64,000 nt of DNA, taken from contig NC_087444.1 of the NCBI RefSeq assembly GCF_036321535.1, forward strand, positions 75,392,001-75,456,000, written 5' to 3'. The DNA comes from Camelus dromedarius. Lineage: Eukaryota. The notes under the pieces are model-generated. The model did no database searches, was not told the origin of the DNA, and saw only the letters and a list, made by a program, of their open reading frames with translations. Position 1 is the first letter of the stretch. Each line of letters opens with the position of its first letter. Positions 16,708 through 33,944 of the stretch are shown here, piece after piece. The position numbers and the translations under genes are program-made.

Positions 16708-27712
<11,005 letters not shown>

Positions 27713-27714
27713 CT

Positions 27715-27960
27715 TCCTGCGGCGGCGAGTCCTCGCCTTCGGCCTCCCGGGCTGGTCGCCCCGCCCCCCTATCCTTCTCTGCGCCTGCGTTCCGCGCCGC
27801 CAGCCAGTCAACAGCCGCGGTGCCCGCCCCGCCCGCCCAGAAGGACCAATCGGGAGGCCGGAGGGGAGAGAGGTGGGGCAAGTAGATGCGGGCCAATGAG
27901 GAGCAGATCCCTGGGAGAGAGGCGGAACCCGGAAAAAAGGACATTGTGAAGGGGGTGTGG
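27715..27960 (-). promoter_or_regulatory. ETFB CpG-island promoter
   Basis: CpG-rich, with GC boxes, an NRF1-like TGCGCCTGCGT at ~27780, CCAAT at 27846 and 27893, and ETS-like CCGGAA, immediately upstream of the ATG. Confidence 0.8.
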
Positions 27961-28476
27961 CCAGGAACTGGGGGAAAGGTCCCGCGAGGGAGGGACGCGT
28001 TCCTGGAGAGGAGTTCAGAAAAGACCTCCTAAACTTTTCCCAATGCCTTCGGGTCTACCCTCTCCCCTAGTGCCCAACCCGTGTCCCATTCCCCCTACCT
28101 CATTCTCTCCAAGCCCGTGTTCCTCGTCCCCTCTATGATCGCGCCTCTACGTTCCTCCATATCTGTCCTCCCCCGTCCTTGTCTCCACTTTTCCTCCGTG
28201 TCTGTGTCCCTATATCCTCTCTATGCGCCCATGTCCCCTGATTCCACTATCCCCATGTCCCCGTCCCCTCCAAATACATGTCCCTTGTCCTCTCTATATC
28301 CGAGTCTCTACCACGCCCGTGTCCCCCCCATGTCTACAATGTTCCCTGTAGGTTCGTGTCCTTACGCCCTCCCTGAGCCTCCAAGTACCCCCGTATCTGC
28401 GTCCTCAGGTCCCCCAGAAAGTCACATGGAGCCGCTGCGGTGGAAGCCGTTCCTTTATTCTGCCAAGCACCTGCGG

Positions 28477-29886
28477 TTACAAGCACACTGGAAATTCACT
28501 GATGGCATCCGTGCTCTGCACGATCATGTCCGCCAGCAGAAAGCAGAAGCCTGGCGGGAGGAGAATGGAGGGCAGGTGGAGGAGGGTAGGTCCCGGGGCG
28601 GATGACCCGGAGGGCCCCAGGGACTGGAGTTTGGGGCTCCAAGTGCTTTTCTGCCGGGTCCCCGGGAGCCCGGAGTGGAATGTGTTGGGGAGTCCCTGGG
28701 AAGTCACTGTGGAGTTTCCGGGAAGTGGCTAGGAGTCTCTGCAGGGAGGGGGTGTTCTTCGGGACCGTCTCTTCCACCCTCTTCCGCTGTCCAGATTACC
28801 CGCGAGAACAGAGAAGGATAAAGTCAGCCACCCCAAAAAATAGGACCAGGAGAAGACGACGTCGTTTTTCCACATATTCTTCACTATATAGCAGCCTGTC
28901 AAGGCGATCAGCAGCAGCAGGCCTGGGCCCCGCCCACCCCCCGGGTGAGCGTGGCCAAGAGGCTGCACCCAGGCCCCACCCTGGCCTCGCCCACCGCCCC
29001 AGGCCACGCCCTTCGAGCCCACCCCGTCCGGGCTCTACCCCGTCTCCCCGGCCCCGCCCCTAGCCCCGCCTCTCTAGCTCCTCCACCACCAGAGCTGTCC
29101 TTCTGATCCCCGCCGTATCCTCTCGGTCTCCAGCCCCAGCTCCCGGCTCCCATACCCATGCCTCAAGTCCGACCCCTGGGCCCCTGCCCCTCCAAACTCC
29201 AGGCCCACCCTATGCCTGGCGGCCCGCTGCCGTCTCACCGCAGAGGAAGAAGATGGCGCTAGTGGTCTGGCCCCGTGGGTCGCCCTCTTGGCACAGAATC
29301 CGCAGCCCCATCACCAAGCCCACGATGCCGGAGCCCGCCGCTAGCACCATGAACGCCCCAGTCACCGCCAGCATGGCTGGGGGAGAGCGGGTCGCATCAG
29401 CCCCGCTGGCACCTTCCCTGGCCACCAACCCCACCCGCCAGTTCTGGGCTGGCAGCAGAGTCAGGGGTTTGGATGGGGACTTGGCAGTTACATCATGAGG
29501 GCCCGTTAATGTTGCAACAGGGAAGCAGATGCCAAAGTGGGAGATCATGGTGGCCTTGGTCACGGAGGGGTAGCTGGAACTTAGATGGAAGGGTAGATTT
29601 GGGGGCGCCGCAGGATGTGCCCCGCAGTTGTGTCAGATGAGGGGGCTAGCTGTGATCGGTCTGTCTGGGGGCTGTCTGTCCAGTGGAGGTCTGACACTGG
29701 GGCAGCCGGGCCTCACTCTGGCCGGGGATGTTGGGTTACATGCCACTGTTACACTCCTGCCACAGGCCACTGTGGCCCCCCAGAGTAACGGAACCAGTAG
29801 TTGGTGGTGGTGGACAGAATCGTGAGGCTGGTAGCCAAGAAGCCCAGCAAGATGCCCCCACTCTGAAGGTTCTGCTTCACCCCCAT
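28477..29886 (-). pseudogene. CLDND2: Claudin domain-containing 2, disrupted: exons complement(28477..28550,28800..28922,29239..29376,29717..29886)
   Basis: MGVKQNLQSGGILLG...NYW and LAVTGAFMVLA...FSWSYFLGW...DAISEFPVCL* match CLDND2. Exon 1 is 170 nt (3n+2) with a 6-G run that shifts the frame (stop at 29749-29751). With the frame restored there is still a TAA at 29736-29738. Confidence 0.85.
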
Positions 29887-30228
29887 GCCAGGGAGGATGC
29901 TGCCAAGGACCACACATGCAGGATTGGCCAACACCTCTCCCACCCCCAGGCCCCTCGCCCCATTCCTTCAAGTCCCTGAAACCCTCTTCCATATGTCCCC
30001 CCATATCCCAGATGGCTATCCCAGCACCCTGCCTCGGGCCCCTACTTATGGGGATCCCCCACAGGCCCCTCTCAGACCCAAGACCTCCTTTCCCCTCAGG
30101 CATCACTGCTTAGGAGTTTCCTTGTCTTCCAGAAACCTCCATCCCTCACATGCCTTTGGCCTGTCCAGTGCCACACCCCTCCTCCACTCCCCCACCCCCC
30201 CACCCCCCTCATCTCTGCACACACTCAC

Positions 30229-30345
30229 CTAAGTGACCCATTCCAGCTCCCAGGGCTTCTCAGACAGAGCCCAGAGGGGTGGGGGAAGGGAAACCAGGTC
30301 TCTGTGAGGCAGTAGGAATTCCAGAATCCGTGGCTGTTTAAAGAG
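30229..30345 (-). other. Probable non-coding first exon and core promoter of CLDND2
   Basis: Strong donor TAG|GTGAGT at 30229, TTTAAA TATA-like element at ~30337-30342, and a matching acceptor (cttggcag|) at 29899 just before the ATG. Confidence 0.45.
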
Positions 30346-31962
30346 ATAACCACCCACCCATACACACACGCACGCACACGGGGCAGCTCTTCTAGCAAAG
30401 TAACAGCTCAGAGTCAAACCGCAGGACTGGGGGCGTCTGAAGGTGATGACAGGGTAGCCCATGTCCTTCTAGAAACTTCTCTTCCCTTGACCGTCCCCAA
30501 GTTCTCCTGTCCCCAGCTCTTTGACTGTGCCCTCCTAGGCCCCCCTGCAGCCTCCTGCTCCTACTCCCGCCACCGCCCAGTGTGGGTTCTCTCGGAGGCT
30601 CCATTCTGTATCTTCTTTTCGGGGGAGCTTCCACACTCCCACAGCTCCAGTGACCACCAATGCTCTGAGAGCATCCCAAATGCCATCTCCAGCCCAGGTG
30701 TCCTCCTGAGCCTTAGCCTTAAATCCTCACATGCTCCCCGCCCTCTCCCAGACCCTAGCCCGCAACCATATCCCAGTTGATCTCAGCATCTTCCACCAAA
30801 ACCAGAAATGACCACATCATCCCACTCAGTTAGTTGGACCAGACCCCCTGGGCACTCTCCTTGCTCTCTTCCTGCCCCTCACTCCACAAAGCCCTTGGAT
30901 CCCTGAGTCCGGTTCCTCCCACCCCCTGAATCTTTCTGGATCCTTTCCTCCATTCCATCTCATGCCCTGGCTCCAGCCCAGCCTTGTCCTGTCTTCCGTC
31001 CCACCTGTTGTGTGGCCAAGATCTCCTCTCACCTCTGGCTTCCCCCATGTGCCCCAGAGGGAGCTTTCTGGTGCTCAGAGAAGATGCTGTCCCTCCCCTG
31101 TTCACCCTCTTCTCTTAGCTCCCTATCACCCACCAGAGACAGAGACAGAGACAGAGACAGACAACTGTTGAGTTAGAGGCACTGACTGCCACCTGTCTCT
31201 CCATCCTCATTTTCCACCAGCTCCACATTCTCCATTCAGCTGCAAAGCACTGTTCTCCATCCTCTGAGAACTTCCACCCTCTCCACGCCTCTGCCTTAGG
31301 GTCCCACTACCTGCATTACCTTCCTTTGGCCCTTGAGAAGTTCTCTGTCTCCTCAGAGAGCTCACCTCCACCCCCCACCCCACCCCACCCCCACGACACA
31401 GCCAGCCCTCCTGCTGTGCCCGCCCTGGGCTCTGCCTGCCCCCACCAGACTTGCAGCCCCTGGTGGGCAGGGTCCGGTCGGACCCACCACAGCACCCCCA
31501 GTGGGAGGCCCCCTCAGAAAGGATGCACTCGGGGAAAGCCAACTGCAGGAGTGAATTTATTAATGAAATGAGCAAGGAGGGCTAAGAGTGAAGGCAAGGG
31601 TGACAAAAGCAGAGAGGGGCGAGAACAAAAGGGATAAAAAGACAAAGGGGAGAGACAAAGGCCAGGGGGAGGGGGGAGAGAGCCCTGGGGCCGAGCCCGA
31701 GCCCACCCCGGCCCCCACTCTGGGTGGGAACACTCTCTGGGTGCCCAGGGTCTCCCACTGTGGAGCTGGTGTGTCGTCAGCTTCTGCTGGGGCTGCATTA
31801 ACCTCGGAATAACTGGGTCCCAGCAAATTTTTGTGGAGTGAACGAAGACACAAAGGAAGGAGGCTGCAGAGCCTGGGAGTGAGGACCGGGAGGAGAACCA
31901 GAGCTTCCCGCGGCTCCTGATGGTGCCTTCAGAGGGCAGGGCCCCAAAGCCATCCACACGGT

Positions 31963-32728
31963 TCACACGCTCTCATAGCCGGGCCGGTGTGCCCCGCAGT
32001 GAGCACCCAGACTCAGGCCACCTGGGGTGGCAGAGAGAAGTTAGAGCCCTTGCCCCTGCCCTGCTCCCTCAGAGCCCCCAGTGGACCCCTTCCCCCCTCC
32101 CCCCGAACTCCCAGGGCAGCAGTCACCTGCACACAGAAAGAGGACAGTTGAAACCCAGCCCAGGTAGAAGGACCAGGAGAAGAAGGACTGGATCTGGGGG
32201 TGTCCAGGCTGGTTCCACCGCTCAATAGTATAGACCACCATGGCCACCATCAAGGAGAGGGCTGGGGGCGGAGACGAGAGAGACAGCTCAGCCCCCCTGC
32301 AGAAACTCCCCAGGTCCCAGTGCCCCAGGTGCAGCCCAGAGCCCTTACCTGCGGCAAAGGCTGTGAAGGTGGAGACCAGGGGGCCACGTCCAGGGGCAGA
32401 CAGTGCGGGGATGCAGGACATCACCAGGAAGCTCACAGAGATCAGGCCCCACAGGGTGGCCAGAATGCAGAAGCTCTGTGTCACGTGGATGTAGCCTGCT
32501 TAGACACAGGACCTCTGAGTGCCTGTCAGCCCTGGCTGTTCCCCACCCCGAGAGAGTTGGCTCCCCCTTACCTGCTATTGAGTCCTGAAGCCCCTTTGGC
32601 CAGAGGCCCGAATGAGATGAAGAGGTGGGCCCCTCGGCAACGAACCAGAAATTTGTGCTCAGAGCAACCAAGATGGACATCAGGCCCAGGGAGCCAGTCA
32701 GCAGGGCCAGGGACCGACAGGGCTCCAT
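31963..32728 (-). CDS. NKG7: Natural killer cell granule protein 7, 165 aa: complement(join(31963..32021,32127..32261,32349..32495,32572..32728))
   Basis: MEPCRSLALLTGSLGLMSILVALSTNFWF...HSGLWP...FFSWSFYLGWVS...RPGYESV*. CDS is 498 nt and intact. Minus-strand AATAAA at 31556-31561. Confidence 0.96.
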
Positions 32729-33944
32729 CGGGTGAGCGCGGGGTTTCTGGGTCCTGGGTGATCAAGAGGCTGGTAATCCAGACTTCTGGGTCTCTGAGAG
32801 AGGAGGAGGCTGTGCCCCCGGACTCCTAGGTCCTCTGAGCTCAAGAAAGAAACCAGCAAGCAGCCGGGGTGGCCTGGGGGCCGGAGCGCCTTAAGACTGG
32901 GCTGGTTTAGCTTTACCCAGTTCCTAGCAGCTGACTCTTGTCACACATCCTCCCTTCCTGGGTTGCATCTACCCCACCCCACCTCCCTGAGGTTCCCCTC
33001 ACAGCGTGTGTGTTGGGGGGAGGGCACTGAAGATGTCACCTCGTCAGTGGTTTGGATGGTGGTTGGAACTTGCCTCTCTGTCTATACAGAAGCCCTAGGA
33101 GCCCTTGGCGGCAGAGGGGGCTTCCTGGAAGAGGTGAGAGAGAGGCTTGGGGGGCCCGGAGGTGAGATGTGGTGAGGCCAGGGTGTGATTGAAATAGGAG
33201 GGGGGGTGTGGCCAGAGGGGACAGTGGGGGATGCATCATGCTTTTCTGTGTGTGGGTTCTGAAACCTTCCATTCTAGGAGATGGGGGTCTCAACTCTATG
33301 GTCTCCACCAAAGGAGGGGGCAAGAGATCAGGATGCCTGGGGCTGAAAGAGGAAGGAGTCAGAGGCTTAGACTCCAGGTTTTGAGGGCAGGGGCCCTCAG
33401 ACTCCCAGATCCATGCTTGCAGCTTGTGCTCAGGGCAGATAAACAGTGATCACAGCTCTAAGAGTTTGTGGAGGGGAAGACGTGCCCACATCCTCCTCTG
33501 ATAAATGAGTTCACAGATAGCTCTGCTTTAAGCGGGGCCTTCAGCTTGGTGGGCTATCACCAAGATCAGGGTTTCTGTGGTCAGGGAGTCGGGATGGGGA
33601 GTAAAGGGTGTCAGGGCTGGATGCTCCAGACCTCCTCCCACACCGGGAGACTGGCCCTGCGAGATCCAATAGGCTGGATCCTCTTTGGTTGGAGACTCTA
33701 GATTGCAGGCCCTCATCCCTCACCCAGATCCTCCCCGAGGGGGTAACTGGCCACTCCTGAAAACATACCTATGAGGACAGGCTCCCAGAAGAGGATCCAG
33801 GTCATGAGCAGCTAAAGCACCATCACAAAAATGGTGGTGGATGTGGCTCCTGTGAGGAGCAGCCAGACAGACTTCAGGAAGTCGGGGCCGTGGGCGTGTG
33901 GTGACAGGAGTCATAGCCCAGAGCCCATCTGCCATCTTGACTTC

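What the first reader, a model, noticed from the sequence alone, without database searches (positions are those of the whole stretch)
29717..29886. CLDND2 appears to be a pseudogene: frameshift, independent nonsense codon and lost cysteines
Seen: exon 1 is 170 nt instead of 3n+1. A 6-G run (29776-29781) shifts ...YSGG into PQWPVAGV* and gives a 45-aa peptide. Removing one G restores GHSGLWQEC, but that frame then reads N-S-G-M-TAA-P-N-I-P-G-Q, where human (from memory) has NHGICSSIPCQ. One Cys codon is TAA (29736-29738) and another is GGC. A homopolymer sequencing error cannot explain the second and third lesions. Inference: lineage-specific loss of a claudin-like tetraspan gene lying next to intact NKG7 and LIM2.
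Basis: partly seen in the sequence, partly recalled or inferred. Interest (0 to 1): 0.75.

Follow-up and report, generated by a model that had tools for sequence, protein, structure and literature searches.

The report
CLDND2 is dead in camelids
The small claudin-like membrane protein gene CLDND2 is a real, fixed pseudogene in camels: a stop codon shared with alpaca shows it died before Old and New World camelids split, so this is an ordinary lineage-specific gene loss not found reported in the searched papers.

Summary
On the minus strand, the first coding exon of CLDND2 (29886-29717) is 170 nt. It has a 6-G run that shifts the frame, a TAA where orthologues have Cys50, and GGC where they have Cys55.

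None of this is an assembly error. The window is identical to a dromedary chromosome assembly. Two Illumina read-set contigs match it base for base over 1.9 kb. A second Camelus assembly, a C. ferus assembly and RNA-library contigs from Bactrian-type animals all carry both lesions.

Six outgroups (pig, goat, hippo, narwhal, a bat, a mole) all have 5 G, TGC and TGC. Alpaca shares TAA50, Gly55 and an extra codon in exon 3, but has 5 G. So the nonsense mutation dates to the camelid stem, and the frameshift arose later in Camelus.

Later independent lesions fit neutral decay: a second TAA at codon 86 in alpaca, and an 18-bp duplication in C. ferus. The locus is still transcribed, but the RNA contigs retain intron 1 and skip exon 3. 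No isoform bypasses the lesions.

dN/dS is raised (0.50 against 0.29) but not significantly. NKG7, LIM2 and ETFB alongside are intact. Verdict: a true unitary pseudogene, of modest interest.

The parts
28477..29886 (-). CLDND2 unitary pseudogene, from start codon to stop codon. It has four coding exons and lies between NKG7 (upstream) and ETFB (downstream).
   Evidence: Exon translations align to CLDND2 orthologues. Gene order is the same in alpaca, pig and hippo loci.
29717..29886 (-). Coding exon 1: 170 nt here, 169 nt in the outgroups
29776..29781 (-). 6-G run, a +1 frameshift. It has 5 G in alpaca and all six outgroups, and 6 G in the three Camelus assemblies.
   Evidence: reads
29736..29738 (-). 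TAA at codon 50. It is TGC (Cys) in all six outgroups and Cys in 54 of 55 orthologue proteins. Alpaca shares the TAA.
29733..29741 (-). Cluster of four substitutions within 7 nt: ATC TGC TCC became ATG TAA CCC. All camelids share it.
29721..29723 (-). GGC (Gly) at codon 55, in place of the second cysteine of the claudin C-x9-C pair. It is TGC in all six outgroups. Alpaca shares the GGC.
29239..29376 (-). Exon 2, open in Camelus. Alpaca has its own CAA-to-TAA change at codon 86 here.
28800..28922 (-). Exon 3, open. It is skipped in every spliced RNA contig seen.
28891..28893 (-). Extra in-frame TGC codon, present in camelids only and absent from 55 of 55 orthologues
28477..28550 (-). Exon 4 with stop codon TAA at 28479-28477. 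AATAAA lies at 28459-28454.
28786..28788 (-). Alternative acceptor inside intron 3. The exon 2 donor (29239) joins to 28786 in both RNA runs.
   Evidence: table 5. Protein P0002 reads across the same junction.
29896..29901 (-). Acceptor of the first coding exon. In Bactrian-type RNA, an upstream non-coding exon ending at 30229 is spliced to 29896. The dromedary window has AT where every other species has this AG, but keeps an AG 3 nt upstream.
   Evidence: table 7

Best explanation
This is the camelid orthologue of CLDND2, a four-helix membrane protein of the PMP22/claudin family. It is a unitary pseudogene. In the common ancestor of camels and alpacas, codon 50 (Cys) became TAA. The neighbouring Cys55, half of the claudin-type extracellular cysteine pair, became Gly. 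Translation from the normal start therefore ended after 49 residues, inside the first extracellular loop, and no four-helix protein could be made. The dead gene then decayed separately in each lineage. Camelus gained a G that shifts the frame at codon 37. Alpaca gained a second stop at codon 86. The C. ferus assembly carries an 18-bp duplication. The promoter and most splice signals survive, so the locus is still transcribed. The transcripts seen retain intron 1 and skip exon 3, and none encodes the protein. Shown here: the lesions, their distribution among species, and the RNA contigs. Inferred: the loss of function, and a rough date within the camelid stem.
For: 1. Lesions are in the sequence at the stated coordinates.
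2. They are real. Contigs X5 and X8 are identical to the window over 28300-30200. Assemblies L002, L004 and L005 all carry 6 G and TAA. RNA contigs with exactly the seven L005-type variants also carry both lesions. Twenty DNA-type runs hold 100% of the sampled words.
3. Alpaca shares TAA50, Gly55 and the extra TGC codon, but has 5 G.
4. All six outgroups have 5 G, TGC50 and TGC55. Of 55 full-length orthologue proteins, 54 have Cys50, 51 have Cys55, 55 have Ala136 and 54 have Pro138. Camelids are changed at all four.
5. Independent later lesions exist: TAA86 in alpaca and an 18-bp duplication in C. ferus.
6. No joint in two RNA runs bypasses the lesions. Intron 1 is retained in a contig that is spliced at both ends, and exon 2 joins to 28786 or to exon 4.
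7. Among the 120 listed CLDND2 hits, out of 195, the only camelid protein is a 69-aa C. ferus fragment.
8. The camelid dN/dS of 0.50 is above the background 0.285.
Against: The rate tests are not significant. Camelid omega does not differ from background (p = 0.13), and its difference from 1 is only borderline (p = 0.06). Exon against intron divergence between camel and alpaca is 0.022 against 0.030 (p = 0.39). Exons 2-4 remain an open frame with good splice sites in Camelus. The gene tables returned for the camelid loci list products of 167 aa (173 aa in C. ferus), so the locus appears there as protein-coding. The RNA evidence comes from assembled contigs only, which drop minor isoforms and cannot show abundance. 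The alpaca codon-86 stop and the C. ferus duplication each rest on a single assembly. I could not search a whole camel genome for a second, intact copy.
Confidence: 0.9

Rival explanations
1. The lesions are sequencing or assembly errors, for example a miscounted homopolymer, and the camel gene is intact.
For: The frameshift sits in a G homopolymer, where long-read assemblies often err. The gene tables list a 167-aa product for the dromedary locus.
Against: Illumina-based contigs of X5 and X8 match with no differences. Three separate Camelus assemblies agree. RNA contigs from genetically distinct animals carry both lesions. The TAA differs from TGC by two substitutions and is shared with alpaca.
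Confidence: 0.01
2. The locus still encodes a shortened product. Candidates are the 45-49-aa N-terminal peptide with one helix, a protein starting at the conserved Met58 of exon 2, or the 130-aa ORF of the intron-retaining transcript.
For: The locus is transcribed and spliced. Exons 2-4 remain open in Camelus. Camelid omega stays below 1. C. ferus was annotated with a 69-aa protein made of exon 2 plus exon 4.
Against: Alpaca has a stop at codon 86, inside any Met58-initiated frame. The N-terminal peptides differ between Camelus (frameshifted tail) and alpaca. The spliced contigs skip exon 3, so helix 3 is missing. Neither P0001 nor P0002 nor any exon piece matches PF00822. On my rough estimate, an open 110-codon frame has a fair chance of surviving this long without selection.
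Confidence: 0.05
3. The locus survives as a functional non-coding RNA or as a regulatory element for NKG7 or ETFB. On this reading the protein is lost but the transcription unit is under selection.
For: Transcription and several splice sites persist long after the inactivation, which predates the camel-alpaca split. Exon divergence is slightly below intron divergence. ETFB exon 1 lies about 0.7 kb downstream.
Against: The exon/intron difference is not significant (p = 0.39). Splicing in the RNA contigs is irregular. Residual transcription is common for young pseudogenes (general knowledge).
Confidence: 0.04

Closest known systems
CLDND2 (claudin domain-containing protein 2) of other mammals, PMP22/EMP/MP20/claudin family PF00822
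   Same: Orthologous position between NKG7 and ETFB. Same four-exon structure, splice phases and polyA signal. Residues are 70-87% identical to a bat orthologue, piece by piece, except the six-residue piece after the stop.
   Different: Stop at codon 50, frameshift at codon 37, Cys55 changed to Gly, an extra Cys codon in exon 3, and replacements at otherwise near-invariant Thr115, Ala136 and Pro138. No open frame yields the four-helix protein.
Lineage-specific unitary pseudogenes dated by shared inactivating mutations. Textbook examples, from my own knowledge: GULO in haplorhine primates, enamel genes in toothless mammals.
   Same: A single-copy gene at the ancestral locus. One inactivating mutation shared by the whole clade, then independent secondary lesions in the daughter lineages. 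Transcription persists.
   Different: No phenotype or ecological correlate is known, because the function of CLDND2 itself is uncharacterised. Only 40 papers in the library mention it, none functionally.
Human CLDND2 splicing behaviour
   Same: Weak exon 3-4 splicing with intron retention is reported in human NK and CD8 effector-memory T cells (PMC13754577). Isoforms that skip exon 3 are predicted in narwhal and panda. So exon 3 skipping in camel RNA is not specific to the pseudogene.
   Different: In the camel RNA contigs intron 1 is also retained, and no canonical exon 1-2, 2-3 or 3-4 junction was recovered.

Membership tests
PMP22/EMP/MP20/claudin family (PF00822), as a functional member | Pfam PF00822 match above the gathering score | tested here: inconclusive
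   Orthologues P0015 and P0040 score 51 and 59 bits (cut-off 26.7). The camel exon pieces, P0001 and P0002 give no match, but the pieces are only 37-45 aa, too short for a fair test.
PMP22/EMP/MP20/claudin family (PF00822), as a functional member | One uninterrupted ORF encoding four transmembrane helices | tested here: not met
   Frameshift at 29781-29776 and TAA at 29738-29736. Both are confirmed in reads and in other assemblies.
PMP22/EMP/MP20/claudin family (PF00822), as a functional member | First extracellular loop motif W...GLW...C-x(8-10)-C (established claudin signature, from my own knowledge) | tested here: not met
   W31, GLW40-42 and Cys45 are kept, but Cys55 is Gly and Cys50 is a stop. 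The full pattern is present in 51 of 55 orthologues.
CLDND2 orthologue (by descent) | Conserved gene order LIM2 - NKG7 - CLDND2 - ETFB on one strand, with matching exon structure | tested here: met
   Locus gene tables for dromedary, alpaca, pig, hippo and narwhal. Exon-by-exon alignment.
Unitary pseudogene | ORF-disrupting lesions verified independently of the assembly | tested here: met
Unitary pseudogene | Lesion fixed and shared across related species, while outgroups are intact | tested here: met
   TAA50 is in four camelid assemblies. TGC is in six outgroups. Twenty DNA-type runs hold 100% of the sampled words.
Unitary pseudogene | No intact copy elsewhere in the genome | not testable with these tools
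   No whole-genome search of a camel was available. Indirectly, the only camelid protein among the 120 listed hits (of 195) is a 69-aa fragment.
Unitary pseudogene | Relaxed selection (dN/dS rising towards 1) | tested here: inconclusive
   My own two-ratio codon model gives background 0.285 and camelids 0.50. The likelihood-ratio tests give p = 0.13 against background and p = 0.06 against 1. Exon/intron divergence is 0.73 and not significant.
Unitary pseudogene | No transcript isoform that restores the frame | tested here: inconclusive
   No such joint appears in X15 or X19. These are contigs, which can miss minor isoforms.

The most novel reading that the evidence does not exclude
The loss of CLDND2 in the camelid stem was not neutral drift. 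On this reading it is part of a change in the cytotoxic-lymphocyte programme: in humans the gene is most active in NK and CD8 effector-memory T cells and sits beside NKG7. Camelids would then be a natural knockout that reveals what this uncharacterised claudin-like protein does. Alternatively, the surviving transcription unit has taken on a non-coding or short-peptide role.
Probability: 0.07. Interest if true: 0.6.

Novelty: new member of a known kind. Interest (0 to 1): 0.33.

Why it matters
CLDND2 has no established function. A family of large mammals that has lived without it since before camels and alpacas split shows that the protein is dispensable in that setting. It also offers a natural knockout for comparison with its intact neighbour NKG7 in cytotoxic lymphocytes. 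There is a practical point too. The gene tables returned with the camelid loci list a 167-aa product (173 aa in C. ferus). Such models should be treated as a pseudogene and not as assembly errors, and should be kept out of orthologue sets used for selection scans.

Tried and rejected
- **Assembly or homopolymer error:** rejected.
- **Splicing around the lesions:** no joint inside exon 1 and no exon-1-skipping loose end appeared in two RNA runs. The evidence is contigs only.
- **Branch dN/dS test:** the first script timed out. The rewritten model ran, but neither null hypothesis was rejected.
- **Exon against intron divergence within camelids:** not significant.
- **Pfam scan of the camel exon pieces:** no hits, uninformative because the pieces are short.
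- **Look-ups that found nothing:** hippo NKG7 X2, narwhal CLDND2 X1 and snow leopard CLDND2 were not on record. Hippo and narwhal loci were reached through the NKG7 X1 proteins instead.
- **Literature:** no paper in the library links CLDND2 with camel, pseudogene in the evolutionary sense, or gene loss. Supplementary tables of gene-loss surveys were not searched.
- **Stop-codon read-through or recoding:** considered and set aside. TAA is not a selenocysteine codon, and Camelus has a frameshift upstream of it (reasoning only).

Full report
**What is in the window**

The minus strand between 29886 and 28477 carries a four-exon gene. Its pieces translate to a clear CLDND2 orthologue.
- Exon 1 runs from 29886 to 29717, with donor GT at 29716-29715.
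- Exon 2 is 29376-29239.
- Exon 3 is 28922-28800.
- Exon 4 is 28550-28477, ending in TAA at 28479-28477, with AATAAA at 28459-28454.

All splice sites are canonical. ETFB exon 1 follows about 0.7 kb downstream, and NKG7 lies about 2 kb upstream.

**Checking the observation**

- Exon 1 is 170 nt.
- The run at 29781-29776 has six G.
- Frame 1 ends after 45 residues, in ...YSGGPQWPVAGV*.
- The frame one base on reads GGHSGLWQECNSGM*PNIPGQ, with TAA at 29738-29736 and GGC at 29723-29721.

**Whose genome it is**

A 69-aa C. ferus protein named CLDND2-like matches exon 2 at 100%. Window 27300-33000 is 100% identical over 5,701 bases to chromosome CM070318.1 of assembly GCA_036321535.1. I reached that locus through the Camelus dromedarius NKG7 protein. 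The window is therefore dromedary.

**Are the lesions real?**

Two searches for sequencing runs found 20 DNA-type runs, under several coded organism labels, that hold 100% of the sampled 31-mers. Laying four runs on 28300-30200 gave the following.
- X5 and X8 each cover the whole stretch in one contig, with no differences and no gaps. The tool cautions that either could be the source sample.
- The RNA-library contigs of X15 and X19 differ from the window at seven places: 29042, an insertion behind 29169, 29704, 29852, 29897, 30036 and 30083.
- Those seven differences are exactly the ones that separate the window from locus L005, a second Camelus assembly reached through the NKG7 protein shared by C. 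ferus and C. bactrianus.
- So X15 and X19 come from genetically distinct, Bactrian-type animals. They show no change at the G run or at the TAA.

The C. ferus assembly (L004) also has 6 G and TAA. An assembly or homopolymer artefact is excluded.

**Comparison across species**

I fetched the orthologous locus from alpaca, three Camelus assemblies, pig, goat, hippo, narwhal, a phyllostomid bat and a mole. I aligned the genes exon by exon.
- All six non-camelids have five G, TGC at codon 50 and TGC at codon 55.
- All four camelid sequences have TAA50 and GGC55. They share a tight cluster of four substitutions within 7 nt (ATC TGC TCC became ATG TAA CCC) and an extra in-frame TGC codon in exon 3.
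- The sixth G is present in the three Camelus assemblies only. Alpaca has five.
- Alpaca has its own second nonsense codon, CAA to TAA at codon 86 in exon 2.
- The C. ferus assembly has an 18-bp tandem duplication in exon 1 that the Bactrian-type RNA contigs lack.

This is the classic pattern of a unitary pseudogene: one inactivating change in the common ancestor, then independent decay in the daughter lineages.

**Conservation of the changed sites**

I aligned 55 full-length mammalian orthologue proteins.
- Cys50 is present in 54.
- Cys55 is present in 51.
- Ala136 is present in 55.
- Pro138 is present in 54.
- Thr115 is present in 51.
- None has the extra codon.

Camelids are unique at nine positions. 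Cys45 and Cys55 lie nine residues apart after the GLW motif. This is the claudin-family cysteine pair of the first extracellular loop (family signature, from my own knowledge). Orthologues match Pfam PF00822 above threshold. Even apart from the stop codon, the camelid sequence has lost a defining feature of the family.

**Rate tests**

I fitted a two-ratio codon model of my own, with F3x4 frequencies, a fixed species tree and stop codons masked. It gave omega 0.285 for the background and 0.50 for camelids (stem 0.53, crown 0.45). The camelid ratio is not significantly different from background (p = 0.13), and is only borderline different from 1 (p = 0.06).

Exon divergence between dromedary and alpaca is 11/501, against 26/861 for introns (ratio 0.73, p = 0.39). 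Pairs of functional lineages give ratios of 0.49-0.71, significantly below 1. These tests point towards relaxed selection, but 167 codons give too little power. I count them as inconclusive.

The usual mixed-branch formula on the stem ratio places the inactivation about one third of the stem branch before the camel-alpaca split. This is a rough inference. By my recollection, not checked here, that split is some 16-25 million years old.

**Transcription**

The locus is still transcribed in RNA libraries labelled as reproductive-system samples.
- One X15 contig runs unbroken from the exon 2 donor (29239) to 29896, so it retains intron 1.
- That contig is spliced at both ends, so it is not genomic DNA. 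Upstream it continues into 28 letters that map to 30229-30256, the end of an upstream non-coding exon followed by GT. Downstream, the exon 2 donor joins to an alternative acceptor at 28786 inside intron 3 (both runs), or to exon 4 (X15).
- No exon 1-2, 2-3 or 3-4 junction was recovered, and no joint lies inside exon 1.

The longest ORF of the main transcript is the 130-aa protein P0002. It starts in intron 1 and has no family match.

Exon 3 skipping and intron 3 retention also occur in intact species and in humans (PMC13754577). That part is therefore not a sign of decay. The evidence here is contigs only, so minor isoforms cannot be excluded.

**Known or new?**

Among the 120 listed CLDND2 hits, out of 195, the only camelid entry is the 69-aa C. 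ferus fragment. Yet the gene tables returned with the camelid loci list a product of 167 aa (173 aa in C. ferus). That length is only possible if the frameshift and stop were edited out of the gene model.

In the paper library, 40 papers mention CLDND2. None mentions it together with camel or gene loss. The two that also contain the word pseudogene are human gene-expression studies. The gene has no established function. In humans it is expressed most in NK and CD8 effector-memory T cells.

**Verdict**

The loss covers the whole camelid family. It was caused first by the nonsense mutation and the cysteine loss, and the frameshift is a later, Camelus-only event. This is a new example of a well-known kind of event, and of modest interest.

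Noticed in passing
L004:8843-10271 (C. ferus assembly), equivalent to window ~29750: An 18-bp tandem duplication (GTGGCCTGTGGCAGGAGT) in exon 1. It is seen only in this assembly and is absent from the Bactrian-type RNA contigs. The called product is 173 aa, six residues longer than the 167 aa called at the other camelid loci.
   Followed up: partly
window 29897 (minus strand T; G in every other species): The dromedary alone has AT in place of the conserved AG acceptor used in Bactrian-type RNA to join the upstream non-coding exon (which ends at 30229) to the first coding exon. An AG 3 nt upstream remains.
   Followed up: partly
window 29733-29741: Four substitutions within 7 nt arose on the camelid stem. 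By a rough binomial estimate this is denser than the roughly 5% stem divergence predicts. It could be a single multi-nucleotide mutation event.
   Followed up: no
L011:10819-12235 (narwhal CLDND2, exon 3): Narwhal exon 3 has a 3-bp deletion, plus Trp-to-Gly and Tyr-to-Cys changes at sites that do not vary in the other five non-camelid sequences aligned. One annotated narwhal isoform skips exon 3. This may be incipient decay in that lineage.
   Followed up: no
proteins P0068 (Nannospalax), P0090 (Octodon), P0122 and P0086 (Heterocephalus): These rodent CLDND2 models lack Cys55 or are flagged as low quality. They may be independent degeneration in other lineages, or poor gene models.
   Followed up: no
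protein P0235 (C. ferus, 378 aa): This protein is named electron transfer flavoprotein subunit beta but clusters with NKG7. It looks like an old chimeric gene model spanning the NKG7-CLDND2-ETFB interval.
   Followed up: no
L001:12875-14283, L002:12843-14252, L005:8843-10253: The gene tables list a 167-aa product at the broken camelid CLDND2 locus. The annotation seems to have repaired the frameshift and stop as if they were assembly errors.
   Followed up: partly
window, whole: The window contains 457 N. None lies in 28300-30480, which I read in full. I did not look at them.
   Followed up: no
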